Of a stretch of 64,000 nt of DNA, positions 23,836 through 43,745 are shown one piece after another. Each line of letters opens with the position of its first letter. Positions within the stretch are counted from its first letter, which is position 1. Both the position numbers and the translations under genes were made by a program. Source of the DNA: Macrostomum hystrix (taxonomy: Eukaryota > Animalia > Platyhelminthes); contig CATNEN010000011.1 of assembly GCA_950097015.1 (NCBI GenBank), forward strand, positions 1,178,001 to 1,242,000, written 5' to 3'. Under the pieces are notes generated by a model, which saw only the letters and a program-made list of their open reading frames with translations, was not told the DNA's origin and searched no databases.

Positions 23836-24720
23836 TAAGAATATAAAACAAAGTTGCAGATTGTTCTCCCATATTGTTTTTGTTTTCCATTTTATGCCAG
23901 TATGTTGCATAGAGCTTAATTTGTGTTGAATTGTATGCTTGTAGGCCAAAAGACAGTAAAAAAGCCTTTAGCTACAAAGCTGGTCATTAATAACATCACT
24001 AGATATGCTACATGTACCCAACCAACATATCAGTGCTTTTTGAGTCCTGTAATGAATAGGCTATTATAAGAAGCTTTTTACAGTAATTATATGCCTTAAA
24101 AGTGATGTTATTTCATTATTTGTGTGACATTTTTCTTTACAAGTAAAGAAAATATATATTTTTCTATGCAGGAATATGCAAAATATCAAAGAAATGTAAA
24201 AAAATTTTTTTCCTACTAGGGTGACCCTATCATGGAATTACCCATTTACTATTGAAACAGAGATAAAATAGATATAAAACTTTTTAACAGCAGCTACAGT
24301 ACTCCATAATTAACAGATGCCTTTGAATTGCACAGAAATTTATAAAATGCTTTCTATTTTCATTTATTCTACTTGTGTGTATGCAGCTTTTTATCCAGTG
24401 GTGAATCTGTTAATAGTAGTATTCTGTTAATAGATACATAGGCCTAAGTCAGGCTTGCTATATTATGTTTATAATAATGAATTTGAGGAGTTAAAGGCAA
24501 ACAGCCTTAATTGTACAATTAAGGCTGGTGTCAAATTTTGTATGTGGTACAACTGGAGTTCCACAGAACTGGAAGACATCAACTTTAAGTGTGCCAGTTT
24601 TGTGAGCCATTCACTCCTAGTAAGTTTAAAAGACATGAATGTCACTACATAAGGATTTGCAGCTAAAATGTAAAGCTCTATTCTTATTAACATCTGGACT
24701 GTTATGCTATTTGTTGCAGA

Positions 24721-27700
24721 ATGAGTCAGCAGGGTGTCAGCAGTGCTGGTAGAAGCAGCCAGGGTGGCTCTTTAACTTCACAATTAGGCCTACCACACTG
24801 GACTGGGCGCAATGTAGACTGCTATGCTCTAATTGGTCAGCCAGCTAGGCTGTCTGTAGTTCGTCCCGAGCCAATCAGCGATCGTCGTCGGGAATTTTCT
24901 GATTCTTCTCTTAGCGCGCTGTTTAAACCCGAAAATAGTGCCTTAGAAGACCAAAATCAGAAGCCTTATTTAGTTAACAAAAGCGGTGCCTATGAACTCA
25001 GCACTGGAGCTGATGATTGTGTGCCAGCTCGACTCCTTCTGCACGCCGAATTCATGGGTCCACCATTTCCAGATCAAGACGCTGCTTTGGATGACGCTGG
25101 CGAGCCCATTGCCACCGCCCAGACGAAGGAGAGCGAGCCTGCGATGCTATTTGAAGAACTGCTGCACGGATTGCCTTGGCGAACTTCTGTGGAAGAAGCC
25201 AAGTTAGTAGCTCTTATACTTATGTATGGTTCTAAAAATAGAAAATGACGTCACATAGATAGGCCAAAGAGACGAACAGAAAACCCTACTTTTGAGATGC
25301 TGTTGCTAAAAATAGCAATTGACCCGCACGCACGTTGCGCATAATCATATGTACTTCTGATTCCAAATCCACAGAACTGGAAGACGTCGACCCCAAGCTT
25401 GCCAGTTTGGTGAGCCGTTCGCTCCCGGCCAGGCTTTGAGCTCAACTGAATCCAATGAATGGCCGCTAGCCACCCTGCGCTTGCTGCGACAGAGATTGGC
25501 TAATAGATTGGGCGTTGAATTCAACTCGGTTGTCTGTCGGCTCTATCGAGACTGCCGCGACGCTTCTGAAGATTCCGACGGCGGAGGCGGCGGCGGTGAC
25601 TGTCCTAGTCTTGGCCGGCATCCCAGCGTTGCCTGGCTGTTGCTGGGCCGATCCGGCTTGCGATTTCTACTGGCGCCTAGGCCGGGTAGAAGGTAAGAAT
25701 AAAACTTAAGGGTCACATTGTGTGTAATGTCTTGGTAGTAAATCTGGTCTAAAAAGACCATCGGGTAAGCTTGCAGCTAGACCCGAGGATTCCCGGGAAC
25801 TTCAAATGAATGCAAAAATTGCATTGAGATTAAGTGTAGTGCATTCATTTAATGATATGATTTATCTGGCTGTGTACAGCCATGGCTAAAAATAGCATCT
25901 TGGTTATGTCAAAGCGTGTTAATCTCGGGGCGCTTTAAAAACCCGAAATTCCACATCCTTGAAAATTTATCGCGCGAAAATTTCACAACCTTGATTTTCA
26001 CTGGAATTATGAGATGGCGAGGACATTTACGGATCACCTACTCGGCCAGCATAACTGCGTTTATGTGGACTTTGTACCGAGTCTGCTGACGATTTCGTAA
26101 CGACACACATCTTGGCTGCGTCTCGAATCTTTTTAAAAAAACTCCTGCGTCACTTTGTAGGGCTGCAAAGTGCCTCCACAGTAGTCGACGACGCGTGTCT
26201 GTAGTCGACATGAGATGCGTACTTCTCCGCCATCCGCCATACCATGAGAATTCTAGATTATATGGACGTGAAGGCCTTTGTGAGCTTTACATAATCGGGC
26301 CAACATGAAAATATACAAATCGATGATTCCGAATGAAAAATAAAGTCTTCCTTTTAAAGCTAGTTTTTCTAGGTAGTTACCTTACATGACCTTACATACA
26401 TACATATACCTTAAAAGTTAATCTACGTGCTTATAATTTTGCCAAAATATTCAAATTTACTACACGCAGTTACTCGATAAATTGATCCTATATTTAACGG
26501 AGCAAAAAAACCCACGAAGTTAATTTATCCTAACTAGCTTTGCCACTTTCCTAGCAGAAGCGTTAGCCGTCAAGTCCAGCTCTTAGCAGCCGTGTTGAAC
26601 AGCTTCAGCAAAGCAGTTGTAAAATTTGAGTAGGATGCTGACGCTCACAATGCGTTTACGAGAATTACCTCGTAGAATCGCAGGTGCGAAGGATCCTCAA
26701 TTATCATTGAGCATGCTGACTCGAACAGGATAATGTGCTCATGTCGTAAATTAAGAAGCCTGTCACTGCCCTGAGGCTTAGAAATTATCTTCCAGGCTTC
26801 CTTGCAGATGGAAAACGCTATGTCAGACGGTTTTGTCAAGGCACCTCGATTGATCTGTCGCAGGAACGTGGAGTGTTTCAAGTTCTCTGCTTGCGAATCT
26901 GGAGCAGCAAACAGCAGCTCGGCACAAGATGGACAGTCCTTTTGCGCTGTAATAGACTTTAGCAAACTTGCCTGCGACGTAGTGTTATGCGTCATCAGCA
27001 GCGCCAATTTCATCGTCTAGTTTCACTTCGCTCACTCAAGTTGAGTTCGCTCATCGTAGACTTTGAGCGAACACATTACATTAGTAATTTCCTCACCATC
27101 GAAAGGTCACTTCGGCTTGGCAGGTCGATACGCCGCCAGAAGTTGATGTATTTTGCTGCGTTACTTCTTTTCAACGTGCCCACCAGAGCGTGTTTGTCAA
27201 TAGGAAACTAAACATTCTGCTGCAGGTGACCAAAGTGAATGTAGTTTCTAAGTTTCTCAGGGCCGCAGCATTCGTATGCGAAAATTTCCCGACATTCTTT
27301 GGCATTCATCCAGCTGAGTGCCGCAATTCGGACATGGCAAATTATGCCAATTTTTTTTCTTTTAAGCTCAGTTCCTGTGTCGCGACGTTGATGCTGGTGT
27401 CTAGAAATCACCCGGCGGTTAAAATCACGTCGAAATGACGTCGAAAATCGACGTCGAAATTTCATGTCGATTTGAACCACGATTTTGACGTCGAAATTTC
27501 GCTATCAGATGTCGAGTATGCGACGTCGCGTTTTCCACTATTGATGACGAAAAGTCGACGTCGTTTATATTCATGATTGCAGCAAGTTGATGTAGATTTT
27601 CGACAAATTTTTTACTAGTATATTAGTATGCTAGTGCATTGTTTCATACAATAGTCATAAATTTCTTCCAGCTGACGAAACATAAATTTTAGTTTATACG

Positions 27701-30700
27701 CTGATCTACCCTTAAGTCGGAAATAAATGTTAAGACTAAATGTTAAGTCCAAAAAAGGCTGACGTTTCATTTGCTATCCGAAACAGATGCAACTAATCCC
27801 GCAACCATGAAAAACGTCTACAGTATATTCAATGGAAAAATGAGAAACAACAATGGCATGGCAGCAAGGCAAACAATGGAAAAATGAGGGACAACAATTG
27901 CATGGCAGCAAGGCAAACAATGGAAAAATGAGGGACAACAATGGCATTGCAGCATGGCAAACAATGGAAAAATGAGGGACAACAATGGCATCGCAGCAAG
28001 GCAAACAATGGAAAAATGAGGGACAACAATGGCATCGCAGCAAGGCAAACAATGGAAAAATGAGGGACAACAATGGCATTGCAGCAAGGCAAAAAATGGA
28101 AAAATGAGGGACAACAATGGCATCGCAGCAAGGCAAACAATGGAAAAATGAGGGACAACAATCGCAACAAATGCAAAAAATACAACAGATTAGAATCGTA
28201 AATGGGAAACAGTAAAAATCAACGGCGTCAACGGTTAAAACTCGCGGAAATTCTGCTTTTTCGCGTCCTTAAAAAAGCGTCTTGTGCGGTCGCGTAGGAC
28301 GTCCTCGGCTGCCGAGTTGAGAGGGGCATTTGCTAGAAATATTTTCGGTAGAATAAGCAAGCGGCTTTACTAAACAATTACAATACAATGTTCTCATACA
28401 TATATCCGGAGAACATAGTACATTTACAAAACAATTAATAAAATTACCATCGATGAGGAGCGGAATAAGCAAGTCATTCGCTGATATCCTGGTCCCATCC
28501 TTGGGTCGTTTGGTGGTCTTATAATTGCGCCCCGTCATATTAAAGGCCGTCCGGAATGGCTTCGCCACCAGCATCTTCAGCTGTGCCTTCACGGATTCGT
28601 TCAGGTCGTTCGATTTCGCTTCTTTTAATCTTCGCACCTGAAAGTGTCAACCACAATCGTGACAGGCCAGGAAAATAATAATTATGATCATATCAGATTT
28701 GACTAAGTAAACATTGGGGCTCCAAAACACATAGGCCTAATCTTACTTATTAAAATAAGTACTTTAATAAATAGTAATCACTATTAATGACGTTACAAAA
28801 AATACAAAAGCAAGCCAGCTTTCTATTTGTCCATATTTCATGATACAAGTACCAAAGTGAACTTTATATTACTCACAAATACAAAGTATATAGCTACAAA
28901 GTTTTTATAGAATAACTTCATAGTAACTCCTTCAATTATTACATATAAATAATTAGATAATTATGATATATGTTGTAACTTATGCTCTAGCTAGATGCAA
29001 GCAATTGATGTGGAGTGTGCTGCGGGAATCGAGTGGGAATGTGAGCCAGCGGAATTTTTCAAATTTTTAATCAATCAATAATCGCGACCCACCTAGCAGC
29101 TGGCCACAAACAAGATCATTAATCTTAGGGCCGGGTTTTGGGCGGCGGTGAATTAAGTAGCCGTCGAATCCCTTCTCCCTGGATCTGTCTAGACCCCTGT
29201 AGGAATGACTGATCGCGGCCATAGCTTTTATTGTATGAGTAGTTTAGGTCATAATTCCCCTCCAAACCGCGATCAGATATTGGGAATCACTCGGGCATTA
29301 TGAGTGATCATTAATTCTTCATGTCCCCACTTCTTTACAGTATTCGAGCCCAGCTCGACTTTATGACCTCCTCCTTTAGATACATGTAAATGTCACTGTA
29401 GGCAGGTCGGCGCCTGCGCTTCCCATTGTCCTGGCGGAGTAACAATCATTTGGCTGTCTGCCGGCAGCTGCTCTCGAGGAGCATCTGTCGTTTCTCGCCG
29501 TCGGTTCATTGGGCAATCGGGGCGGCAATCGCCGCTTCAATTCCTCGATGACAGGCTGGCGCGAATGTGGGTTATTTTGATGGATGTCGGGGTTGGCGTG
29601 CTGCAAGACTATTTAAGGAAGCGCGCTGCGCTGCCCCTAACAACTGTTAACCTACCTCCGACCCCCCCCCCTAGATCCGGACTTTCCACCTTGGACCTTA
29701 CCTGCCGGCCCGGACTCCCACCGGACCTAAGGCACTTTCCCCATCCACCTAAGGCTTAGACCCCAGAGCTAAAAGCTCAAGCAAGCGCTCACAGGCCCAT
29801 TGCCTGTCCCCTTTCCCCCTAATCGCAAGCCACCTCTTTAGGTGAGCTCTAAATTGAGCCACTGTGCTCCCAGTGTGTTGGCCCCTACCAGCTCACAGCA
29901 GTTTCCTTTCCCGGCCTTCTGTTTTGCCCTACCCCTTCCCCGAGAGCTACAGGATTGCAGCACGCGGCCGAATCAGCATCCAGCTAAGTAACCCGCGCAG
30001 CGGTTTTATAATTGTTAGTCCTAAGGGACCTTTCTCTAGGTTAGGCGGCATTTAGTGGGAGGGGAGCTAGGAATTGTTTAGCCTAATAAACTATCTAATT
30101 TATAGCCATCATTTAACTTATTGGGCTTACTTTTACAACAACTTAATTCCTTTTATTATGTCTCTATTTCACTTTTATTTCATTGTTAGACAGCCCTCGA
30201 TCATGAGTGGCTAACTTATTAGGGGGTGGGCTCTGGTGATGCCGAGCTGAAAGCTGCGGCAGGAAGACGACTGTGAGCGCGCATGAGAGTAATAAGGAGC
30301 TAGGGGTTTGCGAGTAATATGCGGAGCGTAGCATGTGTTTCTCTGCTAGGGGTGGGGAAATTCCTTGGCGGGTTTTTCCTCTCTTTCTGGCGGATCAAGG
30401 AGTGCGTGTCAACCTCCCTTGTCAATTAAGTTTCCCTTCTGTTCCCCGCCTCTCGCTGCCGCCGCCATGGGAGCGAGGGGTGTGATCTAATAACCATCGC
30501 TTGCATAATCACTCAGCCAGTGTTCTGCTTAATCTCTCCTGCCGCTGATTTCCTCATCTCACACAGATTCGGATTTGCTAGTTATTTAATGTGTAGACTG
30601 CAATCTAATGTAAGGAATGTGCCTGATGTTTCATGAGTAGGATTCCGGCTATGGGTTTCTCATTCGAGTTCGGAGTACCACCTTTCTAGACCACTGTAGC

Positions 30701-33700
30701 GCAGTTTCAGGAATCCCCTGTTGAGGCGTGTCTCGATTCATTCTGGGGTCTTAGCCCTAGTCTAAAACGGAAGTTACAGAATGCCCTATTTTTCGGCTTG
30801 TCTGAGATCTGTGTGACAAACTAGGAGCTGTGAACTCCGGGGACCCAAGTTCCCAAATGTCTGCGGTGGCAACGTAGGCGCATTGGGTGGTGGCGCTACC
30901 CTAGATCATTTTCCGCTTTGCCAATAGCCTTTCCGCATTTCTAAGACAAGAGCCTGGGCCGAATCGACCACTGCTACCACTGTTAGGAGTCAGTTATGTA
31001 CATGCTACTGATGACAGTAGGCTATCTAGCCCTGTCCTACCTGCTTGCGGGTAGTCCGATATCTCTTTAGACTTTAGCCGGTTTCGAGCACTGCTTGGGG
31101 TAGGCACGGCAGTCACGCCTGTGGCCTATGGGTTGAGTGGGACTGGCCAGCCTGAGGCCGAAAGGACCACTCCCTGCATCCACTGTCTCTCCCTTCATCT
31201 CTCCCTTCATCCCTCTCCCCGCGATAAATCGCGAGGCTTTGCGGTACGACTCCTAACTCTATCGCCATTCCCACACTCCCTTTCTCTCTTGAGGACAGGT
31301 CATCGGATTGCAAAACCCGCACCCACTTCACAATTAGCTACTTATATTAGGCCTATATGCTATAGTGCAGTTCTACTTCATGAGTAGCTATGGATTGGCT
31401 ATGCTTTTATTTATAATGTAACAAACATAGATTAGAATTAGAACCAATAAGGAAATTATGTATTTATGTACAAAAAGATAAATATATGTATTATTTTATT
31501 TTATTTTTATATTAAAAATTATATACATATAAATATTAGAAATACTTATTGTTATACAATTGTACCCTTATTCTATTTGGAAAAAAACAATTCGTTACTG
31601 TTCATTAAATGCTACACTACCAAAAATGTTCAAAAAGCTGTACTTCAAAGTAAAGGGTGTCTACTTTATGGTTACTTTATTAATTTACTTATATCCTGTA
31701 TAAAAGTTTAAACCTTTTAGGCAGCAAACCAAAGCAGTATTATAAAACCTCGAACTTTACACTAAATTAATAACACACATGAATAGTGACAAAATAATGA
31801 AGTGCAATGAAAGAAATAATTCGCCACGCTTAATACAGAAAATGCAAGTTAAATATTAACGCATCAATCGCCCTACACCTGGTCCTGCAATTGTCGAAAA
31901 TCGACATCGCATGTCGATACTTTTGAAATAGAATAATAATATTTTGCTGCGTTAAAACAAAAAGTGTCGTGTCTGCCTCTGGTGAATTTATTAAGTCATT
32001 TCAGTAAACAGAAAATCACGTTGAAAATGTGTTTTAAAGATTTTCAAAATTATTCATTCTGCAAATAAGAAGATAAAAAAATCATTTCGATATTTCGACG
32101 TCAAAGGATGGTTCAAACGACAACTCATTTGTCGCTAGTTTTTGAAAGGCGAAAATCGACGTCGTTTCGCCATGATTTTAACCGCCGGGCAGCGTAATAG
32201 ATAAGGCGAGGACGAAAATCTCCCCGGTGGCAATTTTAATCAAAACAACGTGAGCAAACTTTTACTACGATTAATAATAATAATAATAATAATAACGGAC
32301 GCTGCGGAGGTTAGAAAACTGCAGCGAACACACGCTGCCGAAAAACGCGGGAGTCAGCCCTGGCAGCAGCCTGAGGGGAGAAGCCAAGACTCTGCAAGTC
32401 AGTTAAAAGGCAATCAAGTAGAGTCACGCGACGGCCCTGTCCACGCCGAAGGCCTTCACTGGGCGGGTTGAGCAGAAGGGTCGCGAGCGGCGGGCCCGCA
32501 CCCCTCGCATGAGCCCGCAGGCAGTGGCCGGCCAGCATTTGCCGACGCCTTTGCAGGGAACGAGCGAAGGAGGGCACACGGGCTCTCGCGGTCAGCTCGG
32601 CGTTGCTCGCAGTCTCAGGGTAGCGGATGCCAAGCGCCGACCTCAGCAGGTGTCGGTGAGACGCCTCCAGGGCAGCCTCACTGGTAGGCGTCATCGGCAC
32701 TGCTTCGAGGCCATATGCAAGGACGGATTCGACAGCTGAGCGGAAGAGGCCGATCTTCAGGACGTCGGAGGCAGTAGAGTCAAAGATGGTACGCAGAAGG
32801 TGGAGGGCGCGCCAGGCCTGTTGCTTGCGGAATTCGATGATGGCGTTGGCGTCCAAAATTTCCACACCTAAGTACTTAAAGTCCTGGCAGGTGTTGATGA
32901 CATTGCCATCTGGAAGTTGGAGTGGTGGGGCGGTTGCTGTGCCCATGTGCAGGACCTCCGTCTTGTTGTAGTTAATGTGAAGCCCGACTCTCCTGCCTTC
33001 CTCGGCCAGGCGACAGACCGCTCTCGGCTGCGTCAGGGTCGCAGCAGGTCAGGGCGACGTCGTCGGCATAGGCGAGGCAGGTCAGGCGGACGCAGGGGAG
33101 CCGGGCACTACGCCTGCGGGTAACCATGAAGCCATCGTCGTCGGGCGCGCCTGAGAACGAAGTCCATGACCATCACGAAAAGAAAAGGATTACGATTATA
33201 CTACGATTAATATGATTATTGATTAATTGTTGCAGCAGCAGTGCCAGCTCTGAGTAGGACAGTGTGGCACATGACTATATGGGCAGGTCGGCGTAATACG
33301 CAAGCCTAACATCTGCATCGTGAACATCCCGGATAAAAAAAACCAGACCATGCTTACTAAGACTTATTAAGTCATGTGCTTCAAAAGTGAGACTTTATCA
33401 GTCAAGTAAGTTTTAGGTGCATCTTGCTAAGTTTAGAGTATGATTTAATTAGTCCTTGTAAGTAATCTAAGCATTAGCCACATCTTACTAATGTTGTGCC
33501 GGTCGTCCTGCTAACAATGCGGGATCCGGCGGACTCCAATATGAAGTCCAAGAATACTAGGTAGTGTAGTAATAGCGCTGCCACCAGGGCGTCAGGACTT
33601 CTGCCTTCGGTGAGGTGAAGGATCCTTGGCCCGAAAGAGATGAAGTCACGAAGTCTTAAGAAGCACACTTTGCAGAGTTCCAGTCTGCGCAGTTAAAGGC

Positions 33701-36700
33701 TGTCAGAGTCCTGCGTAGCTCGGGTGGTGGTGGGAGGCTAAGTTAGTTTCGGGACTTGGCCAGAACTGAGCTTGCGAGCAGTCACACGCAGAGACTGAAG
33801 TGGAAACTTGGACACTGATAGCACTGACAATGAAGAGGAACTAGAACAAGACTAAAATTACGCCAAGGAAAGGCCTTTGAGGGCCAGAGGAGCGGGGGGC
33901 TTTCTTTTATAGGCCAGGGCCTCCCATAGGGTCAGTGCAGAGTTAGAAAACACGTGATGGAATCACGTGGTTTCTAAAAATAGCAACTGATGTCAGTGGC
34001 GCCAGGAACGTCACTCCTACGTAGGCTCTTGTCCTATAATCAAAGCCATAAGTGCAGTAAACATGTTTACGTGCACTTTAATAGACAAAGAGAGAGGCCA
34101 GTCACATGAGGAGAATCACGTGCTGACTGAGGGCAGACAAGCACACACAAAAAAAGGAGCAGGGAACAGCGAAGCCAGCGCGGGACAAAGAGGTGACGGC
34201 TCACCCCAGGGGGGAGAGACAACACACTCAAAGTGCAGGCGCGGCCGGGAAGGGCAGGGCAGAGAGGACAAGACAACAGACCAGACAACGCCAGAGAGGG
34301 CGGGCCGGGCAGCCACTCAATGCCAGCAAAGGGAACACCTAAGCTACCTTGCAGGTGGGGCTACTGACAGCTAGTGAGACACCAATAGGCCCCTAAGCAG
34401 TGGCTTACTACACTAAGTTTATGTGTAAAACTTAATAAGATGATTCATGCACTTTGTACATGTAGAGACAGGTCACAGGTGTCAGTTTAAAGGATCTGCC
34501 TGTGATTCAAGGTGGCTATGCCCATCGAACAGGATCAAATTAAGATTATGAGTAAATATAGGCAAAAACTCCAGAAATTCTCTGCTTACATGGTTTTCTG
34601 TATAGGCTCCCTTGACTTTAATTATACTTACTGACTCCAATGCACATAGCAGCAACCCAGTCGGCAGTCGCAGGCAACAAAAAAAACTTCGTGGAAAATA
34701 TTTTGGCAATTTTTAAATCCAAGGCAAATAGCATTGGACTGTCCTTTGACAACGAGCAGAATAAATTGAATGCTAAAATGTATTTGGTTTTGAAGACGAC
34801 AAAGTCGGTAAAAAGTGGCAAAATAAGTTTAAATAAGTTGCATTACAAGATTTTCCATTTCAACATCATGTGCCATAGATAAATTAAGATCATTGATATG
34901 TTGGACATGGCATGGCACTGTCATCACACTTAGCCATAGAAATCATCGACAAGCATTCCGCTACCCAATAACGCGCATGTCGGATGCGTGTTATTGTCCA
35001 AGAACGCGTGTTATTGTCCATAGACAGTGTTTTATCGACTTTATTAAAAAGCTGATTTCGTAACGATAAATAATTGCGATATTAAAAAATTACAACCAGT
35101 ATGAACGCATGGGGGAACTCTAAAGTTTGTCTCGTCGCCTTGTTAAATACCGCTTGACCGTCTTCTCGCATTTCTGACCGGTATTTAGCATTATGTCTTG
35201 CAATGTATGACCAGCGGCTTCTAAGTCGCTCACCCTGGTGACTGTTGAGAATTCAGAAAAAGTATTTTCATGTCAACATCTACAAGGTATTTAGAACTAG
35301 TTATGCACAATATCGTATAATAACGTTTACTTACCGGATACAGTGATTAGTATACAACTTGCTCAGTCGAGCCGTCGCACTCAGGTTTTTCATGAATTCT
35401 TGTAGAAATCGGTATCCTACAAGAATTAAGTAAATCGGTCTTATCGGAGAAGCGAAACGGTTTTCCCTGTTTTCCTTGAAGAGGCTTCGAAAAAAACGAA
35501 TTAGCAGCCTGTGGTAGATGACTCATGTATGTATATATATAAGCTCAGTGTTGTAGATTCTGGCATGCTTTCCGTCTACACTTTTTTTCCGAATGGTCAA
35601 CGTCAGCAATTCGATTTTTCGACGGTAGGGGAGGCAAAGCCAAACACTTACGACCATCAGCATCTACACCGTGTTGCAAACAATTGCGTCTCATGAGGGC
35701 ACGTAAGTGCTCCTGTCCACGCTCGCCAAGCTCGTAAAGAATCCGGAATAGCGTCTCATCCTGCAATCTTTCAGCATTACGCCTGTCGAAGTAGTCACGG
35801 ATCTTCCGCATATCCCTTTCTTCGATAGCGTCGTAGTTGCGCGTCTCTTGGTCGGCTTCAATGGATTGCTTGATCTTGTAGCAGAGCATTCGATTGCTTC
35901 CATCGAAAGCAATGTGCTTAGCCATCAGATTGGTTGGTCGCTTGCACAATATATTTAAATATCGTTGGATGCCGGCTCGAATGCAACCAAGTGACGAGGG
36001 TGCGTAATACTTCCCTTCTTTCGTCTCCAAGTGGAAGTAGTTAAGTCTCAAATACTCATTCAGGGCTCCATCATCCAGATCCTGATAGTCAGTGCGTAAT
36101 CCTTTGCTCATACGGAATTCGAAAAGCCGACGCCCATTCTCCTCCATTTGTCGCCTAGTGCTAGTGGGTAGTCCTTCCAACTCGACACGGTCTAAATCAG
36201 CCAACTCAGCCGACAGATTTTCATCACTTAACTCAAGCAAGTTAAGCTTCGTATTCTCCAAGACTGATGGATTGATCCTTGATTCCTTGTCTTCTTCGAA
36301 AAACTCAATAAAGCCCGAAATAAGCTCTTCACAATCATCGTCAAGTGAAGATAGTCGCGTAATGACGTCAAGTTCGTCGGCAGAAACGCCACTCACACAA
36401 TTATCAAGCAGATTCTTGTAGTTAATCAACGGCGGAATAATTTTTCCTCTGGTTGCCATTTCACGCTCGTAGTATAATGAATATTATTTACTACTCATTA
36501 CTTTGCTCTCTCTTCTCTTCTGACGTGGACATGACAGATTTACGACATGACATACACTCATCTGCAGTCGGGATGCATGCTATTGGTTTAAACTACGGAA
36601 AGTGCATTTCTCGCTTCTTTCCCAGTCACATCCTTTTCCAGAGGAACAAACCTTCTATGGTAATTTTTAATTGTTTGAGGACTGAGAACTATTTCTCATA

Positions 36701-39700
36701 AGGGGGGTCGTTAATTCACGAACGATGCCGTCCAAACTGTGCCGGCCGACGGTTGCATTTTGATACCATCTGCCTTACTACGCATCTAAGCCAGGAACAA
36801 ATTCTGAACTGTGCATTTCTCCGGTCTCTTTTTAACACAGCTTGTAGATACAGGGTAGACATCTATCATAATCGATAGTGTGACAAGCTTTCGCGATTTT
36901 CAAAGGAGCAAAACGTCACTTAATGCCAGCGTTGTTGCTATTTGTAGCTCTTTTCTCGCAGTAAACTAGTAGTTCTTGACCGTCTTAGTGCTGCAAATGA
37001 ATCTCATAGTTATATCTCAGACCATGTAATTCCGTGCCCCCACGCAAAGCGAAATTCTTGCCAAGATGAAACACTAGCGTAAAATGCAGTAATTTCAGCG
37101 ACGTAGTTGCTAGACGTCCTTTCCGCTACAAATCATCCACCAGGCTTGAAGGAATTTGGTTCCACGCATTTACTCCAGGAACTAGGCCCTCTCTAGTAGC
37201 ATCTTTCATGGCAGCGTCCAATGCCACTCTTGCATCTTTGCACGCAGCGTCCTTCCATAGATTTAGTTCTTTCTTGAGCGTGTGCTGCAGATAGTGCTGC
37301 CTCATAGAAAATTTGTCCTTAAGAGTCGTAGCATTGTATTACGTAGCATCGACTTTTCGCACTTCGAGCATGAACATCTTTAATAGATAGTTCCGCTCAC
37401 TGGCACTCCATTTATGCAGCTCCTTCAACACGAGAAGGCCTGTTGTATCACCGCTCAGAATTTGATTTTGTCGCTGCTCGAACCACTGGTCAAAAAATTT
37501 TACAGTCCATAGTTCCTTCCTTCGAGTATTCTGTGGAATTGCAGCATCCAGCTTCTCTTATATATCCTCAGTCAATAGCGAATAGATTACTAACACGAGA
37601 AGGATTAGTTGCAATAGAAGCTTTATTTTGAAAATATTCTAACACAAGATTTAATTCGTCTTCCATAGTCGCTGCTGGTAAATAAATTGACTGCTTTGAA
37701 TCTAGCTGTCTGAATAATAAAGTTTAAAACAAAACACTTTCAAGTAAGTCACGGCGGATGCCATAGATTAACTGTAACTGTATATCGATACGTCCTCGGC
37801 TTTCAGTAGGTTAGATATTTTATCATCCTTTTCTCAATATGTCTATGGAAACTTTATTTTCCGTAGCTACACTGAGATAAGGAGGAGAATGTATACTTAA
37901 AAAGCACTCTTTTGTTAACTTACCTTCGTCAATTTCTTTCAACTCTTCAGACATGCCGCTGTTGGGAATCTCCGAGGGGCTCTCTTCTTTAAATTTGCAA
38001 ATGTGCTGCAGAATCGCTGCACAAAAGACATCGTCCATGACATCGTTCAAGCCGCATATGAGTCCATTTGGGAAAAGTGACAAATCAATCAGCCTCGCAG
38101 GCACCGGGGCTGCTCTCTCTACCTCCATGTACCAGCCTACGAAGTTGCTCTTTCTCTCTCACTCTTTACAGAATTTAGCTTGTTCCTCGGCCTTAGCGTT
38201 GAAAATGCCATAGACGTCCTTTTAGCGTGCGGTAATGACGAAATAATGGCACGGCGAATGAATTTATGTCTATGGCGAGAAATTAAAGGCGAGAAAATTA
38301 TGTGCCTAATACCAGGCTTTTGCGTGCGGAAATGTCTATGGCACTTCCGCGTCATTTCCGCACTTAAAAGCCTGGTATTAAGCTACCATTGTCATATAGT
38401 CTAGCCAACAAGTGAGTCAAAATAATGGAGATTTTACCACAGACAATTGACAATCAGGGTGCAATAATGCACCAAAAATGCACGCTGGCGGCTTTCAGCG
38501 TGCAATAATGCAACAACACAAACATTGTATTTTACGAAAAGCAAACGTAGCAAATAGTTGAACATTTTTAACGAGCTCTTTGTCTAGTAGTCAGTGCTCT
38601 AGTAGTAACTCGAAAACTCAGTAACTCACTCAGTACTCATCAGTACTCACTGATCACCGAATTTGAAGTTGCAATTGCTGAAACTACCACTTAGATGAAT
38701 ATGTAGCTCCGGTCGAACAGTATCGGCCGAAGATGCTTGAACGTCAACCTTGACATTTTGGATTGACTTCGTCATTCCGACACTTGCCACCCGCTTTGGG
38801 ACCTCGGAGATAGACGTAGCATCCCCCGCCGAATCCAAATCGCCAGATGGTCCGACGATAGCCCCAGACTTATCGTTGGTCGCAGAAGACGAACTGGCTC
38901 CATACAGCGATGCTGACAACACGTCGGACATCTTGCCCAGTTCACTCGCCTTGCTCTTGCCAACTGCGATATTGCCACAACTGCAATATCGCAGTTGTCG
39001 ATGTCGTAATTAAACGAATGGGCTGTCAAAAAAGCCTTCTGTTTACGAACAGCCGCAACTTCTTGCTTCTCAGTGGATTGAACTTTCGTTGCGTCGTACT
39101 GCTGGCCAACAATAGCTTCTAGTTCCTTTATGGTATCTTCTGTTGAAGGCATCCAGCGTTGGACAGTCGGTGTCCTGATACATCACTTTCTCCACGAGAT
39201 CGTTCATTGCGTACAATTCAGCTTGACTAGTCAACTCCTGTTGTCAATCCGCTAACAAGCTCGTTCGGAAAGTAGCTTAGGTTGAGTTTCGGATGTATTT
39301 CAGCCATTCTGAAATTTTATTCACTTTAACAGCCAGCGAACCCCATAAATTCCTACCTCAAATCAGACTGGTTCGATTCAATGGCTGAAACGATTGTCTA
39401 TGGCTGAAATCGATCACCTGATTCATAAGGTACTGACTGAACAGGTCCGAGCATGGTGACAGGCATGAACACTTCTGTAGGTTTACAGGCATGAACACGC
39501 AAAAATAGCGATAGAGTCCGGCTCTAACACAGATCAGCGTAGTTGTTGCATAGAAGGTCTTTTCTTCCTTTCGAAGTGTAGCGTAAAAGTACTTCAACTT
39601 TTCAGCTAGATATTCAACGTCACAAATGTCGATGTTGCACTTTAAAGAACACGCAGTAAAAAAATCCTTCAGTTTACGAATAGCAAAAACTTCCTGCTTC

Positions 39701-42700
39701 TCATTAGATTTGATCTTCGTTGCATCGTACCCCGCGCGCTCGTGCCTAGGTCGTTGCTGCACTCGAAAGCAGTGCGTCATATCTTCATTAAATTAACTAT
39801 TAATGTAAGACTTATTGACCTTAAAGTCGTGATTCCGGCGCTCTAACAACCGCTAAGTTGTCTTATTATATATTTTTTCTTCTTTTCAACTTGATAAATA
39901 TGAAAATTGCGATTCCAAAAAATGCCATCGAAATTGCGAGGCCTTGCAACTCTAGTCTGTGAAATTTGTAACTTATTAACGAAATTGTCTTAGTCATTGT
40001 GAAAACTCGGGTATGATATTGTTAACTATCGATAAACTCATCAGGCTTCGGCATCAGCTGTCGTCTAGAATTGAAGTGTTCCTACCAGCTGGCGGCCTAC
40101 TATTGGCTCGCGGCTCCCTAATGCGCGATTGGCTAATTTCAATTCCACCGGATCCAATCAGAGCTCAGCAGCCATGCGCACTCCTAGCCTTCAGATTAGT
40201 TGCGTCCCGACCTGGCGAGAGGTTGACCGTTCTGCCAGATCGCAGCCACTGTTCGGCCCTGTCTGAGCGTCGCGGCAGTCTACCTGCAGAGCTCTGGTTC
40301 ACTCGAGCCGGCCTCAGCAAGCGTATAATTTTGAATGCCACCAAAGCTCTATTTGCTTGGCCTGATTGGTTGAGACCGGGTGAAGATTTTTCGCCAATTA
40401 GTGGCCAAAGTGTCACTTGTAAGACTGTGCACTTTTCCGCTAGCGGCGGTTTATGGCCCGACTGGATTGCTAGACTAGCGCGTTCTGTTAGCGAGGCTAC
40501 GGACAATGCTAAGCACGGCTTACCCAACTATGCTCACATTGAGGCTCTGCTAATGCAACGCATTAACGATCATCTGGCTTGGCAAACTAGCGATATTGGA
40601 CCTTTCATGGCTGTGGTTGCTATGGGAAATGAAGAGGTAAATTCATTTCTAATGATTTCACATCTCAATATAAACAATTAACTACCTGATCCTAGATCCT
40701 CAGGCAATTAACTACCCGATCCCAGATCCCATTAGCTTCTTAGCTACCTGATTCCAGATCCTCAGCTATTAAACTATCTGAAATCAGATCCTCAGATAAG
40801 CTAGCTGATCCCAGATCCTCAGATAAGCTACCTGATCCCAGAGCCTCAGATAAGCTACCTGATCCCAGATCCTCAGATAAGCTAGTTGATCCCAGATCCT
40901 CAGATAAGCTAGCTGATCCCAGATCCTCAAATAAGCTACCTGATCCCAGATCCTCAGATAAGCTAGCTGATCCCGGATCCTCAGATAAGCTACCTGATTC
41001 CAGATCCTCAGATACGCTTGCTGATCCCAGAGCATCAGATAAGCTAGCTGATCCCAGATCCTCAGATAAGCTAGCTGATCCCAGATCCTCAAATAAGCTT
41101 GCTGATCCCAGAGCCTCAGATAGGCTACCTGATCCCAGATCCTCAGATAAGCTTGCTGATCCCAGATCCTCAGATAAGCTTGCTGATCCCAGATCCTCAG
41201 ATAAGCTTGCTGATCCCAGAGCCTCAGATAAGCTACCTGATTCCAGATCCTCAGATAAGCTAGCTGATCCCAGATCCTCAGATAGGCTAGCTGATCCCAG
41301 ATCCTCAGATAAGCTAGCTGATCCCAGATCCTCAGATAAGCTAGCTGATCCCAGATCCTCAGATAAGCTAGCTGATTCCAGATCCTCAGATAAGCTTGCT
41401 GATCCCAGATCCTCAGATAAGCTAACTGATCCCAGATCCTCAGATAAGCTAGCTGATCCCAGATCCTCAGATAAGCTACCTGATCCCAGATCCTCAGATA
41501 AGCTTGCTGATCCCAGAGCCTCAGATAAGCTACCTGATACCAGATCCTCAGGTAAGCTAGCTGATCCCAGATCCTCAGATAAGCTAGCTGATCCCAGATC
41601 CTCAATTAAGCTACCTGATCCCAGATCATCAGATACGCTTGCTGATCCCAGAGCATCAGATAAGCTAGCTGATCCCAGATCCTCAGATAAGCTAGCTGAT
41701 CCCAGATCCTGAAATAAGCTTGCTGATCCCAGAGCCTCAGATAAGCTACCTGATCCCAGATCCTCAGATAAGCTTGCTGATCCCAGATCCTCAGATAGGC
41801 TAGCTGATCCCAGATCCTCAGATAAGCTTGCTGATCCCAGAGCCTCAGATAAGCTTGCTGATCCCAGATCCTCAGATAAGCTAAGCTAGCTGATTCCAGA
41901 TCCTCAGATAAGCTAGCTGATCCCAGATCCTCAGATAGGCTAGCTGATCCCAGATCCTCAGATAAGCTAGCTGATCCCAGATCCTCAGATAAGCTAGCTG
42001 ATCCCAGATCCTCAGATAAGCTTGCTGATCCCAGATCCTCAGATAAGCTTGCTGATCCCAGATCCTCAGATAAGCTAGCTGATCCCAGATCCTCAGATAA
42101 GCTACCTGATTCCAGATCCTCAGATAAGCTAGCTGATCCCAGATCCTCAGATAAGCTACCTGATCCCAGATCCTCAGATAAGCTAACTGATCCCAGATCC
42201 TCAGATAAGCTACCTGATTCCAGATCCTCAGATAAGCTAGCTGATCCCAGATCCTCAGATAAGCTACCTGATTCCAGATCCTCAGATAAGCTAGCTGATC
42301 CCAGATCCTCAGATAAGCTACCTGATCCCAGATCCTCAGATAAGCTAGCTGATCCCAGATCCTCAAATAAGCTACCTGATCCCAGATCCTCAGATAAGCT
42401 AGCTGATCCCAGATACTCAGATAAGCTACCTGATCCTAGATCCTCATAATACCTGATCTTAATTCTCAAGTTAGTATCAGTAATAATAACCCGAAACTTT
42501 TTGTTTCCATCGCTGACCAGGTTCGTCGACCCCTAGAGATGCGACGTCGTCCAGTTTCAAAGAGCAGCCTTGGCGATCGAGATGACGAAGATGTCCGCGG
42601 ACAGCTGATGTCAGCTTCGATTGTCCTCGGCTCACGCGACATTCTAAACCTGCGCCACGGCTTCTTTCGCGATTGGCAATTCCGCCTGCCGCGACATCGC

Positions 42701-43039
42701 GAAGGCAGCGGCGGTCGGGGAGTGCTCTTCCTTCTATTCCGCCTGTCGGCTCCGCTACCAGCTGGTCCACCGGCGACTTCCCAGCAGACGAAATCCTCCC
42801 TGAAACTGTCGGCCCAGAGACCGGGCGTGTTTCTATTTACGGAGCCCGAAGCTTGTCCTCACCTGTGCAAGTGCTGCTCTCGCTGCTCTGAAGCTGTCAG
42901 CCTGATGGCACTGAATGGCAGCTTGTCAGATCGCAGTGCCCTAGGCTGTCCCCTGTGCGTCAAAGAGATAGGGCGAAGTGTACGGCTGAGCGGTATCCCT
43001 ACTGTCAAGGGGACAGGCCGGACCAGTTTGATTGATTGA
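24721..43039 (+). CDS. 636-aa protein with two tandem ALKBH3-like (AlkB/2OG-Fe(II)) domains lacking catalytic His residues plus a C-terminal half-RING Cys/His motif; exons 24721-25202, 25375-25692, 40045-40636, 42521-43039
   Basis: Exons join by GT-AG in phases 2, 2, 0 (1911 nt, single ORF). GAYELS, LFEELLHGLPW, FNSVVCRLYRD, PSLGRHPSVAWLLLG and IEVFLPAGGLLLARG..MRDWLISIP...LAFR are colinear with ALKBH3 (GVYEIS, ILEQLCQDVPW, FNSLLCNLYRN, PSLGRCPIIASLSFG, VKIPLDHGTLLIMEG..QADWQHRVP...LTFR). A second copy reads DHLAWQTSD...DWQFRLP...LLFR. Confidence 0.8.
26010..27400 (-). mobile_element. Degenerate P-element/THAP9-like transposase C-terminal remnant
   Basis: CPSCAELL...LRQINRGALTKPSDIAFSICKEAWKI and RSGG...QLLAAYR resemble the P transposase C-terminus; stops and frameshifts present. 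Confidence 0.55.
27835..28170. repeat. 44-bp minisatellite inside the TIR element
   Basis: Unit AAACAATGGAAAAATGAGGGACAACAATGGCATCGCAGCAAGGC, about 7 copies. Confidence 0.92.
28235..28637 (-). pseudogene. Spliced 3' fragment of a BEN/DUF4806-like transposon accessory gene; exons 28637-28448 and 28332-28235
   Basis: LKMLVAKPFRTAFNMTGRN...LLIPLLID|ANAPLNSAAEDVLRDRTRRFFKDAKKQ with GT-AG sites in phase. Family assignment from recalled motif only. Confidence 0.45.
32277..33198 (-). mobile_element. 5'-truncated RTE-like LINE (reverse transcriptase C-terminal half)
   Basis: LAYADDVAL, GLHINYNKTEV, DFKYLG, FRSAVESVLAYG and LAGHCLR; (ATT)n tail; 14-bp TSD TACTACGATTAATA at 32263-32276 and 33199-33212; one frameshift near the 5' end. 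Confidence 0.9.
33228..34412 (-). mobile_element. Possible solo LTR
   Basis: On the - strand begins TGTAGT and ends GCAACA, with a TATAAAAG box near 33910 and CACGTG motifs. No TSD found. Confidence 0.3.
34482..34709 (-). mobile_element. Possible pogo/Tigger DDE transposase remnant
   Basis: EFLEFLPIF...LILFDGHSH resembles the pogo LLILDGHSSH motif; very short. Confidence 0.25.
35110..36459 (-). pseudogene. Near full-length Crypton-type tyrosine recombinase transposase, frameshifted
   Basis: KEGKYYAPSSLGCIRAGIQRYL, GERGQEHLR (catalytic R), LSKLYTNHCIR (HxxR), then after a 93-nt GT-AG intron (35334-35242) DIMLNTGQKCEKTVKRYL (catalytic Y region). Frameshifts around 35420-35600 and at the intron junction. 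Confidence 0.8.
37060..37440 (-). mobile_element. Crypton/DUF3504 (ZMYM-type) fragment
   Basis: RNYLLKMFMLEVRKVDAT*YNATTL...LWKDAACKDARVALDAAMK parallels the DUF3504 LEVRKKDGxEY...LDAxMK motif; contains stops. Confidence 0.65.
38307..38380. repeat. 28-bp near-perfect inverted repeat (hairpin)
   Basis: TAATACCAGGCTTTTGCGTGCGGAAATG versus CATTTCCGCACTTAAAAGCCTGGTATTA, 18-nt spacer. Confidence 0.85.
38647..39780 (-). mobile_element. Two partial Crypton-like fragments with duplicated N-terminal part; one joined directly to a C-terminal tail
   Basis: YDATKVQSTEKQEVAAVRK versus YDATKIKSNEKQEVFAIRK duplication; TLRKEEKTFYATTTLICVRAGLYRYF Crypton motif; C-terminal MSDVLS...SGSFSNCNFKF. Confidence 0.6.
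40680..42460. repeat. 27-bp minisatellite (GATCCCAGATCCTCAGATAAGCTAGCT) filling the last intron of the AlkB-like gene
   Basis: About 65 tandem copies. Confidence 0.96.
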
Positions 43040-43189
43040 GTTTTCGATAAGTTTTCTAGGAAATGTTTTGTCTTAGAAACGACTCATATTTTCTGCAGTT
43101 GTTTACAATAGCTTGTATATACAAAGACTATAGATTAGAATGACTAGATAAACTGGGATTCCAATTAGGATCGAATCTACTAAGGAATT

Positions 43190-43745
43190 GGGATTCCGAT
43201 TGAGATCAGAGCTAGTAGAGGGATTGGGATCAGAGCTAGTAGAGGGATTGGGATCAGAGCTAGTAGAGGGATTGGGATCAGAGCTAGTAGAGGGATTGGG
43301 ATCAGAGCTAGTAGAGGGATTGGGATCAGAGCTAGTAGAGGGATTGGGATCAGAGCTAGTAGAGGGATTGGGATCAGAGCTAGTAGAGGGATTGGGGTCA
43401 GAGCTAGTAAAGGGATTGGGATCAGAGCTAGTAGAGGGATTGGGATCAGAGCTAGTAGAGGGATTGGGATCAGAGCTAGTAGAGGGATTGGGATCAGAGC
43501 TAGTAGAGGGATTGGGATCAGAGCTAGTAGAGGGATTGGGGTCAGAGCTAGTAGAGGGATTGGGATCAGAGCTAGTAGAGGGATTGGGATCAGAGCTAGT
43601 AGAGGGATTGGGATCAGAGCTAGTAGAGGGATTGGGGTCAGAGCTAGTAGAGGGATTGGGATCAGAGCTAGTAGAGGGATTGGGATCAGAGCTAGTAGAG
43701 GGATTGGGATCAGAGCTAGTAGAGGGATTGGGATCAGAGCTAGTA
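43190..43745. repeat. 24-bp minisatellite (GGGATTGGGATCAGAGCTAGTAGA)
   Basis: About 23 highly homogeneous copies. Confidence 0.96.

What the first reader, a model, noticed from the sequence alone, without database searches (positions are those of the whole stretch)
24721..43039. Tandem catalytically dead ALKBH3-like domains fused to a half-RING: candidate alkylation reader / ubiquitin adaptor
Seen: four exons, which the ORF track shows as unrelated fragments, splice in frame across a 14.35-kb intron into 636 aa with two colinear ALKBH3-like folds. In domain 1 the HxD motif (ALKBH3 WHSDD) reads SEDSDGGGGGG, the distal His (WQHRVP) reads WLISIP, CNLY reads CRLY, and the first 2OG-binding Arg (PRVNLTFR) reads PCALLAFR. 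In domain 2 the same sites read WQTSD and WQFRLP. The C-terminus carries CPHLCKCCSRC...CPLC..I...V.L, RING-HC ligands 3-8 without the first CxxC. Established: AlkB catalysis needs HxD...H, and in mammals ALKBH3-ASCC recruitment depends on ubiquitin signalling by the RING ligase RNF113A. Inference: an intact ORF with all Fe ligands lost twice suggests a pseudoenzyme that binds methylated or alkylated nucleic acid and links it to ubiquitin signalling. I do not know of this architecture being described.
Basis: partly seen in the sequence, partly recalled or inferred. Interest (0 to 1): 0.85.

Follow-up and report, generated by a model that had tools for sequence, protein, structure and literature searches.

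The report
Doubly dead ALKBH3 pseudoenzyme gene
A flatworm (Macrostomum-type) gene encodes a protein made of two copies of the ALKBH3 DNA/RNA-demethylase fold that have both lost their iron-binding residues, plus a small cysteine-rich tail; it is expressed and kept by selection, so it is a non-enzymatic descendant of a repair enzyme whose job is still unknown.

Summary
Four exons (24721-25202, 25375-25692, 40045-40636, 42521-43039) join in frame into 636 aa. Assembled transcript contigs from four runs (two studies) carry the 25692/40045 and 40636/42521 junctions.

Domain 1 is clearly ALKBH3-derived (BLASTP 1.4e-14, hhalign 99.3%). Domain 2 is a much more diverged AlkB-like domain: targeted tests are significant, database-wide HMM searches are blank, and structure prediction failed. 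Both domains lack the HxD...H iron triad and the first 2OG-binding arginine.

The M. lignano ortholog is an unstudied "hypothetical protein" in conserved synteny. It is 70% identical and has the same losses. dN/dS is about 0.13-0.19, lowest in domain 2.

A M. lignano paralog has an intact ALKBH3 domain followed by the same dead second domain and no tail. The tandem architecture therefore predates the loss of catalysis in domain 1.

The "half-RING" is an invariant block of 7 Cys and 1 His with no statistical match to RING domains. Domain 1 has also lost the base-contacting lid residues. The "alkylation reader / ubiquitin adaptor" reading is therefore unsupported.

Verdict: a real, selected, lineage-restricted AlkB pseudoenzyme. 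It is a new variant of a known kind, of moderate interest.

The parts
24721..25202 (+). Exon 1 (ATG at 24721; aa 1-160 plus 2 nt). It holds a conserved N-terminal motif (HWTGRNVDCYALIGQPARL), the start of AlkB-like domain 1, and an acidic insert.
   Evidence: Same phase-2 intron position as M. lignano exon 1. Junction to exon 2 not directly observed.
25375..25692 (+). Exon 2 (aa 161-267). It encodes FNSVVCRLYRD, the former HxD loop (D227-S228-D229 at 25571-25579, followed by a Gly run) and PSLGRHP.
   Evidence: Its 3' end is found joined to exon 3 in contigs of 4 runs.
40045..40636 (+). Exon 3 (aa 267-464). It encodes the end of domain 1 (I298 at 40136-40138 replaces the distal His; C311 replaces the first 2OG Arg) and the first two thirds of domain 2 (Q447-T448-S449 at 40583-40591 replace HxD).
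42521..43039 (+). Exon 4 (aa 465-636 plus stop TGA at 43037-43039). It encodes the end of domain 2 (F518 at 42680-42682 replaces the distal His) and the Cys/His-rich tail.
24961..40213 (+). AlkB-like domain 1 (aa 81-323; spans introns 1 and 2), catalytically dead.
   Evidence: BLASTP to hamster ALKBH3 E=1.4e-14. hhalign to a 108-sequence ALKBH3 profile 99.3%, E=1.3e-20. 39 of 81 near-invariant ALKBH3 columns kept.
40220..42766 (+). AlkB-like domain 2 (aa 326-546; spans intron 3), catalytically dead. It is the most constrained part of the protein.
   Evidence: BLASTP to ALKBH3 E=1.5e-4, colinear with residues 152-283. hhalign P=1.7e-4 with score 35.5, against shuffles of 14.8 +/- 2.5. 81 real hits and 0 reversed-decoy hits. 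dN/dS 0.05-0.11.
42854..42988 (+). Cys/His-rich tail motif: C576-x-H578-x-C580-x-C582-C583-x2-C586-x20-C607-x2-C610 ... V618-R619-L620. Probably zinc-binding. RING origin unproven.
   Evidence: All 8 candidate ligands are invariant between the window and M. lignano. No RING hit. AF2 pLDDT 42.
25693..40044 (+). Intron 2, 14,352 nt (1,077 nt in M. lignano). It holds a 44-nt minisatellite and ORFs without Pfam hits.
40637..42520 (+). Intron 3, 1,884 nt. It is almost filled by a 27-nt minisatellite (40742-42446, about 63 copies).

Best explanation
This is a real, expressed, selectively maintained gene for a non-catalytic descendant of ALKBH3, i.e. a pseudoenzyme.

Shown:
- It arose by duplication of a Macrostomum-lineage two-domain ALKBH3 (active AlkB domain plus an already dead AlkB-like second domain).
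- After a burst of change, domain 1 lost the Fe(II) triad, the Asn and first Arg that hold 2-oxoglutarate, and the base-contacting lid residues.
- A Cys7His1 tail is present that the active paralog lacks.

Inferred:
- The protein keeps the two jelly-roll scaffolds as binding modules.
- The second domain, shared with the active paralog and the most constrained part, most likely binds the same partner (a protein of the repair machinery or nucleic acid).
- The tail probably binds zinc and adds a further contact.
- The net effect would be regulation of the active ALKBH3-type enzyme's pathway by recruitment or competition, not demethylation.
For: Splicing and expression.

Orthology: 70% identity over 574 aa, the same four exons and phases, and colinear synteny dynamin - gene - MAPEG - ClpP - next gene.

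Purifying selection (dS saturated at 1.4-1.9):
- Whole protein 0.13-0.19
- Domain 1 0.13-0.19
- Domain 2 0.05-0.11
- Tail about 0.2

Homology of domain 1 to ALKBH3. Homology of domain 2. The language-model atlas gives mostly PF13532 clusters for domain 2 of both paralogs (a lead only).

Active paralog P0004: PF13532 E=1.6e-33, human ALKBH3 structures E=2.7e-53, and aligned to the ortholog over both domains at E=2e-46.

Lost residues are identical or equivalent in both species. H191A nearly abolishes ALKBH3 activity, and the Tyr143 side chain is needed to hold the damaged base (PMC10816986).

Tree: dead d1 pair plus P0004 d1 form a clade (support 0.93). The stem to the dead pair is 1.54, against 0.64 to P0004.
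Against: - No structure: both AlphaFold2 runs failed (pLDDT 29 and 42), so the double jelly-roll fold is inferred from sequence only.
- Domain 2 is invisible to Pfam and to an unbiased HMM search of the PDB.
- Only two species and effectively three domain-2 sequences were available.
- dS is saturated, so dN/dS values are rough.
- The proposed binding or regulatory role has no direct evidence. No partner, nucleic-acid binding or zinc binding was tested.
- A DxD (D227/D229, conserved as DVD in M. lignano) sits where HxD was, so some metal binding cannot be excluded.
Confidence: 0.72

Rival explanations
1. The dead AlkB domains act as readers of methylated or alkylated bases, and the C-terminal half-RING couples this to ubiquitin signalling, either as an E3 or E3 co-factor or as an adaptor analogous to the RNF113A-ASCC-ALKBH3 axis.
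For: The Cys/His pattern can be written as RING ligands 3-8, and the CPLC-x3-I-x3-VR ending recalls C-terminal RINGs of the IAP/MDM type (my memory; weak MDM4 matches at E=1.7-9). In mammals, ALKBH3-ASCC recruitment depends on RNF113A-made K63 chains (PMC8800115; bioRxiv 10.1101/2020.08.28.271874). The tail is conserved.
Against: - No RING match in Pfam at E<=10, in the PDB by sequence or profile, or in the atlas.
- The first CxxC is absent in both species, and the His-to-Cys spacing is atypical.
- The pocket and lid residues proposed to hold the flipped base (R131, Y143) and neighbours are replaced in domain 1 and not recognisable in domain 2 (PMC10816986).
Confidence: 0.12
2. A host decoy or regulator in a conflict with retrotransposons. 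The same genome is reported to hold LINEs whose ORF1 carries an intact ALKBH3-like domain. A dead, multimerising or substrate-competing ALKBH3 copy could interfere with them.
For: Earlier notes of this scan describe several LINE ORF1-AlkB fusions in this genome (not checked here). There was a burst of change followed by constraint. The gene is restricted to this lineage in a search of 1.84 billion representatives.
Against: This is pure inference. The gene groups with the host two-domain paralog, not with a LINE copy. dN/dS is low throughout, with no sign of an arms race.
Confidence: 0.06
3. It is still an oxygenase that uses alternative ligands, for example the conserved DxD in the old HxD loop.
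For: D227-x-D229 is conserved (DVD in M. lignano), and the distal Arg (R317, R538) and Tyr218 are retained.
Against: The distal His is Ile (d1) and Phe (d2). The first 2OG Arg is Cys/Ala (d1) and Val (d2). Asn179 is Arg. Only 39 of 81 (d1) and 26 of 81 (d2) near-invariant ALKBH3 columns are kept. Mutation of His191 alone nearly abolishes ALKBH3 activity (PMC10816986).
Confidence: 0.04
4. A decaying, transcribed pseudogene or an annotation artefact.
For: No Pfam domain is detected. There is one very long intron full of repeats. Catalytic residues are lost.
Against: - Intact 636-aa and 582-aa ORFs in two species (two intact copies in M. lignano).
- Conserved synteny and intron positions.
- dN/dS well below 1.
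- Spliced contigs in four runs.
Confidence: 0.03

Closest known systems
Macrostomum lignano BOX15_Mlig023741g1/g2 (PAA82540.1, PAA74205.1; UniProt A0A267FK97), 'hypothetical protein'
   Same: Ortholog. 70% identity, same four exons and phases, same flanking genes, same lost catalytic residues and same Cys/His tail.
   Different: 582 aa against 636 aa. Introns are 1.1, 1.1 and 0.6 kb, against 0.17, 14.4 and 1.9 kb here. The Gly run and N-terminus are shorter. It has never been characterised, and one alternative UniProt model is auto-named 'HECT domain-containing', which nothing here supports.
Macrostomum lignano two-domain ALKBH3 paralog (UniProt A0A1I8FX44; PAA54966.1)
   Same: Same architecture of AlkB domain plus a dead AlkB-like second domain. 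BLASTP E=2e-46 over both domains. Sister to domain 1 of this gene in the tree.
   Different: Its first domain is intact (WHADD, WLHSVP, SRINLTFR; PF13532 E=1.6e-33). It has no Cys/His tail, and its annotated introns lie at other positions.
Human/vertebrate ALKBH3 (PDB 2IUW, 9NCZ)
   Same: Domain 1 is colinear with the whole catalytic domain (residues 68-281), and domain 2 with residues 89/152-283. Structural motifs are kept: FNS..C.LYR, PSLG..P.A, G.LL...G...DW and L.FR.
   Different: ALKBH3 is a single-domain enzyme with the H191/D193/H257 triad, R269/R275 and lid residues R131 and Y143. Here all of these except R275 are replaced, the domain is duplicated in tandem, and a tail is added.
Catalytically dead 2OG-oxygenase-fold proteins such as JARID2 (dead JmjC domain acting as a PRC2 cofactor); from general knowledge
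   Same: A jelly-roll oxygenase fold is retained without Fe ligands and reused for binding or regulation.
   Different: A different superfamily branch (JmjC, not AlkB). There is no tandem duplication, and this is analogy only.
C-terminal RING-HC domains of the IAP/MDM2 type (Pfam zf-C3HC4_3); resemblance recalled from memory
   Same: A C-x-H...C-x2-C...C-P-x-C pattern followed by hydrophobic and Arg positions at the extreme C-terminus.
   Different: The first CxxC is missing, extra cysteines are present, the H-C spacing is atypical, and no profile or structure match was found.

Membership tests
AlkB / ALKBH3 family (2OG-Fe(II) oxygenase, Pfam PF13532) | Significant sequence homology of domain 1 to the ALKBH3 catalytic domain | tested here: met
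   BLASTP E=1.4e-14 and hhalign 99.3% / E=1.3e-20. E=4.5e-46 to the intact paralog P0004.
AlkB / ALKBH3 family (2OG-Fe(II) oxygenase, Pfam PF13532) | Reaches the Pfam PF13532 gathering score | tested here: not met
   No hit at E<=10 for the four exon products, at E<=1 for full-length ortholog P0001, or at E<=10 for its separate domains.
AlkB / ALKBH3 family (2OG-Fe(II) oxygenase, Pfam PF13532) | His-x-Asp...His iron-binding triad | tested here: not met
   d1: H191->D227, D193->D229, H257->I298. d2: H191->Q447, D193->S449, H257->F518. The same holds in M. lignano.
AlkB / ALKBH3 family (2OG-Fe(II) oxygenase, Pfam PF13532) | 2-oxoglutarate-binding Asn179 / Arg269 / Arg275 | tested here: not met
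   d1: N->R216, R269->C311, R275 kept (R317). d2: N->L, R269->V532, R275 kept (R538).
AlkB / ALKBH3 family (2OG-Fe(II) oxygenase, Pfam PF13532) | Second domain is homologous to AlkB | tested here: met
   Targeted tests are significant. Database-wide HMM searches are blank, so this is met at moderate confidence.
AlkB / ALKBH3 family (2OG-Fe(II) oxygenase, Pfam PF13532) | Double-stranded beta-helix fold | tested here: inconclusive
   AlphaFold2 of the domain 2 plus tail region of the ortholog gave pLDDT 29 with a 6-row alignment. No fold search was run on it.
AlkB / ALKBH3 family (2OG-Fe(II) oxygenase, Pfam PF13532) | Oxidative demethylase activity | not testable with these tools
   Needs purified protein.
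RING-HC (C3HC4) ubiquitin-ligase domain | Eight zinc ligands C-x2-C...C-x-H-x2-3-C-x2-C...C-x2-C in cross-brace order | tested here: not met
   No CxxC upstream of C576 in either species. H578 to the next usable C-x2-C pair has spacing 1 or 4 instead of 2-3.
RING-HC (C3HC4) ubiquitin-ligase domain | Profile or sequence match to RING families or structures | tested here: not met
   Pfam none at E<=10. Best PDB hits are C2H2 fingers at E about 0.1, with MDM4 at E=1.7-9. The atlas gave no usable hit.
RING-HC (C3HC4) ubiquitin-ligase domain | RING fold / E2 binding / E3 activity | tested here: inconclusive
   AF2 of the tail gave pLDDT 42. Activity is not testable here.
Pseudoenzyme (operational definition) | Homolog of an enzyme, catalytic residues lost, yet expressed and under purifying selection | tested here: met

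The most novel reading that the evidence does not exclude
The Macrostomum lineage has turned ALKBH3 into a small gene family with non-catalytic members. In this reading the doubly dead paralog, with its zinc-binding tail, is a dedicated sensor or adaptor that recognises alkylated or methylated nucleic acid (or the LINE-borne AlkB proteins of the same genome) and recruits or blocks repair or ubiquitin machinery. That would be the first AlkB-fold 'reader'.
Probability: 0.12. Interest if true: 0.8.

Novelty: new variant of a known kind. Interest (0 to 1): 0.5.

Why it matters
I found no description of a catalytically dead AlkB homolog or of tandem AlkB domains in the paper library. This gene shows that the AlkB fold, like kinase, JmjC and protease folds, can be recycled into a selected non-enzymatic protein.

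It also comes with a natural comparison series in one organism:
- a canonical single-domain ALKBH3-like protein,
- an active-plus-dead two-domain form,
- a dead-plus-dead form with a tail.

M. lignano is a laboratory model with RNAi and transgenesis, so the function of the dead domains can be tested directly. Together with the LINE-borne AlkB domains noted elsewhere in this genome, it points to an unusual diversification of AlkB proteins in these flatworms. The scope is narrow: one genus so far, and no function shown.

Tried and rejected
- Pfam on single exons, on the ortholog and on its separate domains gave nothing for AlkB or RING.
- PDB sequence search with exon 3 and the tail, and profile searches with the tail and domain 2, gave no meaningful hit.
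- AlphaFold2 of the ortholog's domain 2 plus tail (pLDDT 29) and of the window's tail (pLDDT 42) was unusable, so no fold search was run. The spliced window protein has no reference, so the ortholog and single-exon pieces had to stand in for it.
- The word-index homolog search with the ortholog found only itself. The exhaustive representative search with exon 3 found only the ortholog and the paralog as real hits.
- Direct BLASTP of domain 1 against domain 2 is not significant (E=5.9).
- A first shuffle control with an hhm template gave faulty output and was discarded and redone.
- I looked for the tail downstream of the paralog's gene and found nothing.
- Intron ORFs and Rfam families in 20-45 kb gave nothing.
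- The pseudogene and still-active-enzyme readings were considered and rejected (see rival explanations).
Full report
**Observation**

| Exon | Coordinates | 5' acceptor | 3' donor |
|---|---|---|---|
| 1 | 24721-25202 | - | CAA\|GTTAGT |
| 2 | 25375-25692 | CACAG\| | AAG\|GTAAGA |
| 3 | 40045-40636 | ATCAG\| | GAG\|GTAAAT |
| 4 | 42521-43039 | ACCAG\| | - |

The exons are 482, 318, 592 and 519 nt, 1,911 nt in total. This gives 636 codons plus TGA. The introns are 172, 14,352 and 1,884 nt.

**Transcript evidence**

The look-up of sequencing runs found five runs holding exon 3. I laid the contigs of four of them (two studies) on 39700-40665.

- In every run one contig covers only 40043-40638. 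No contig covers the intron flanks.
- The overhang before the match is the last 30+2 nt of exon 2. The overhang behind it is the first 2+30 nt of exon 4.
- The junctions 25692/40045 (across the 14.35-kb intron) and 40636/42521 therefore exist in cDNA-type assemblies.
- Two contigs (1,991 and 1,753 nt) each carry 826 nt upstream of exon 3. That equals the 800 nt of exons 1+2 plus a 26-nt leader. The 1,991-nt contig also carries 573 nt downstream, which is 519 nt of coding exon 4 plus 54 nt.
- The runs are not on record as RNA. The absence of any intron-flank coverage and the spliced form argue that they are transcriptomes.

The exon 1/2 junction was not seen directly. An in-frame alternative acceptor at 25441 would give a protein 22 aa shorter. 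It corresponds to the shorter UniProt models of the M. lignano gene. The stretch it would remove aligns with a conserved ALKBH3 strand (PRLTAWYG), so I keep 25375.

**Relatives**

An exhaustive HMMER search of 1.84 billion representatives with exon 3 gave only two real hits, both from Macrostomum lignano.

*The ortholog, P0001/P0008 (PAA74205.1 / PAA82540.1, 'hypothetical protein', 582 aa):*
- 70% identical to the window protein over 574 positions.
- Same four exons and intron phases.
- Same neighbourhood, all colinear: dynamin - gene - MAPEG - ClpP - next gene.
- The window is therefore from another Macrostomum-type flatworm, which earlier notes of the scan also say.

*The paralog, P0004/P0007 (A0A1I8FX44, 511-526 aa):*
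- Its first domain is an intact ALKBH3: WHADD, WLHSVP and SRINLTFR are present. It scores PF13532 E=1.6e-33 and human ALKBH3 structures E=2.7e-53.
- It continues into the same second domain, which is also dead there (WREAN, WRYQL), and it has no Cys-rich tail.
- It aligns to the ortholog over both domains at E=2e-46.

A third M. lignano protein, P0122, is a single-domain intact ALKBH3-like protein.

An earlier first-reader note (s1-274003) reports a two-domain ALKBH3 elsewhere in this same genome. That agrees with what I see in M. lignano.

**Domain 1**

- The window protein residues 81-323 match hamster ALKBH3 68-281 at E=1.4e-14.
- The match to a 108-sequence ALKBH3 profile is 99.3% probability, E=1.3e-20.
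- Pfam itself does not reach it.

**Domain 2**

Evidence for an AlkB origin comes from targeted tests:
- hhalign of the three available domain-2 sequences against the ALKBH3 profile is colinear over ALKBH3 89-283, with P=1.7e-4 (local) and 2.7e-6 (global).
- The hhalign score is 35.5. By comparison, 150 column shuffles gave 14.8 +/- 2.5 (maximum 25.2), and the reversed sequence gave 16.5.
- Plain BLASTP gives E=1.5e-4 against ALKBH3 152-283.
- Against 108 ALKBH3 sequences plus 108 reversed decoys, the window and M. lignano domain 2 hit 81 and 82 real sequences and no decoy.
- Domain 2 of the paralog also hits ALKBH3 colinearly, at E=4e-3.
- The language-model atlas lists mostly PF13532 clusters for domain 2 of both paralogs. 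This is a lead only.

Evidence against:
- An unbiased HMM search of the PDB and Pfam find nothing for domain 2.
- AlphaFold2 failed for lack of sequences (pLDDT 29).

I rate the tandem-AlkB claim at about 0.85-0.9.

**Loss of catalysis**

I mapped each domain onto the 81 columns that are at least 95% invariant in ALKBH3.

| Domain | Invariant columns kept (of 81) |
|---|---|
| P0122 | 66 |
| P0004 d1 | 65 |
| Window d1 | 39 |
| M. lignano d1 | 41 |
| Window d2 | 26 |
| M. lignano d2 | 26 |
| P0004 d2 | 16 |

Replacements at the key ALKBH3 positions in the window protein:

| ALKBH3 residue | Domain 1 | Domain 2 |
|---|---|---|
| N179 | R216 | L |
| H191 | D227 | Q447 |
| D193 | D229 | S449 |
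| H257 | I298 | F518 |
| R269 | C311 | V532 |
| R275 | kept (R317) | kept (R538) |

The same or equivalent replacements occur in M. lignano. In domain 1 the lid is also gone: R131->P, W135->Q, Y141->F, T142->A, Y143->P/S and S144->G/H.

PMC10816986 names His191/Asp193/His257 as the iron ligands. It names Arg131, Tyr143 and Arg145 as candidate base contacts. It shows that H191A and L177A nearly abolish activity and that the Tyr143 side chain anchors the damaged base. Catalysis is therefore very unlikely. Reuse of the old pocket as a 'reader' is not favoured either.

**Selection and history**

Codon-aligned comparison with the M. lignano CDS. Values are NG86 and LWL85; dS is saturated at 1.4-1.9, so they are rough but clearly below 1.

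| Region | dN/dS |
|---|---|
| Whole protein | 0.13-0.19 |
| Domain 1 | 0.13-0.19 |
| Domain 2 | 0.05-0.11 |
| Cys-rich block | about 0.2 |
| N-terminal 80 aa | 0.36-0.39 |

In a FastTree of the catalytic-domain columns, the two dead domain-1 sequences and the paralog's intact domain 1 form a clade (support 0.93). The stem to the dead pair is 1.54 substitutions per site, against 0.64 to the paralog, and the terminal branches are short.

This pattern indicates three steps:
1. A two-domain ALKBH3 duplicated.
2. One copy changed rapidly and lost catalysis.
3. That copy then came under constraint again.

The annotated introns of the paralog lie at other positions, so the duplication is not recent or involved intron turnover.

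**The tail**

The tail reads C576-P-H578-L-C580-K-C582-C583-x-R-C586 ... C607-P-L-C610 ... V618-R619-L620.

- All seven Cys and the His are invariant between the two species, and the block EPEACPHLCKCC.RCSEAVSL differs at one position.
- Eight ligands would be enough for two zinc ions without any upstream CxxC (inference).
- Pfam, PDB sequence and profile searches and the atlas give no RING match. The best hits are C2H2 fingers at E about 0.1, and MDM4 appears at E=1.7-9.
- AlphaFold2 gave pLDDT 42.
- By definition it is not a RING, because the first ligand pair is absent. A RING origin is possible but unproven.

**Mechanism**

Shown: this is an expressed, conserved, non-catalytic ALKBH3 derivative with two AlkB-like domains and a conserved Cys/His tail.

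Inferred:
- The second domain was already non-catalytic in the active paralog, and it is the most constrained part here. It is most likely a binding module, for nucleic acid or a protein partner.
- The doubly dead paralog would then act as a scaffold or competitor in the same pathway, with the probably zinc-binding tail adding a contact.
- The established RNF113A-ASCC-ALKBH3 axis (PMC8800115; 10.1101/2020.08.28.271874) makes a ubiquitin link conceivable, but nothing in the sequence supports it.
- A further speculative reading is interference with the LINE ORF1-AlkB proteins that earlier notes report in this genome (not checked here).

**Novelty and score**

- The gene is already deposited for M. 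lignano as an uncharacterised hypothetical protein.
- I found no paper on dead or tandem AlkB domains in the library.
- It is a new variant of a known kind (pseudoenzymes; the AlkB family). So far it is restricted to one genus, with no function shown.
- Interest is 0.5.

Noticed in passing
window 40742-42446, 43198-43745, 45436-46187, 46783-47690, 27830-28166: A string of long minisatellites with periods of 27, 24, 21, 20 and 44 nt (up to about 63 copies). One nearly fills intron 3 of the gene. They create long spurious ORFs on both strands (for example 40784-41605 and 43103-43759).
   Followed up: partly
window 24710-24723: An acceptor-like TTGTTGCAG sits 1 nt before the ATG. Two independently assembled contigs both start exactly 26 nt upstream of the ATG in transcript coordinates. 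This could reflect spliced-leader trans-splicing or a fixed transcription start; the leader letters were not seen.
   Followed up: no
window 22424-23017 (+): An ORF with a Pif1 helicase 2B domain (PF21530, E=1.6e-19) lies just upstream of the gene. It is probably a fragment of a Pif1-like or Helitron-type helicase.
   Followed up: no
window 2645-3961 (+); 16806-17180 (+); 45023-46461, 47871-48928, 51284-52539 (+); 56226-58400 (-): Neighbouring genes: an XRN 5'-3' exoribonuclease helical domain (E=4.7e-100) and the last dynamin exon lie upstream. MAPEG, ClpP and an unnamed gene lie downstream, colinear with M. lignano contig NIVC01000971.1. An LRR protein lies on the minus strand.
   Followed up: partly
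window 32311-32946 (-), inside intron 2: A 211-aa ORF without a Pfam hit matches (tblastx) a stretch upstream of the orthologous gene in M. lignano (L001 about 5300-6400). It is a shared repeat or mobile element, or a small gene that changed position relative to the exons.
   Followed up: no
L003 6001-10112 (M. lignano NIVC01000301.1): The active two-domain ALKBH3 paralog has annotated introns at positions different from those of the dead paralog (after ...SWPQ, ...LCCY and ...TFVA). A Flightless/gelsolin-LRR gene lies downstream of it.
   Followed up: partly
window aa 24-50 of the protein (about 24790-24870) and aa 104-140 (about 25030-25140): Two features are specific to the dead ortholog pair and absent from the active paralog and from ALKBH3. 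One is a conserved N-terminal motif (HWTGRNVDCYALIGQPARLSVVRPEPI). The other is an acidic insert between the first strands of domain 1.
   Followed up: no
M. lignano proteins P0009 and P0010 (UniProt A0A1I8J3Z4, A0A1I8G519): Alternative database models of the ortholog are auto-named 'HECT domain-containing' and 'SAM domain-containing'. The first differs only by a 25-aa shorter exon 2. The second carries a 360-aa N-terminal extension. I found no HECT signal.
   Followed up: partly
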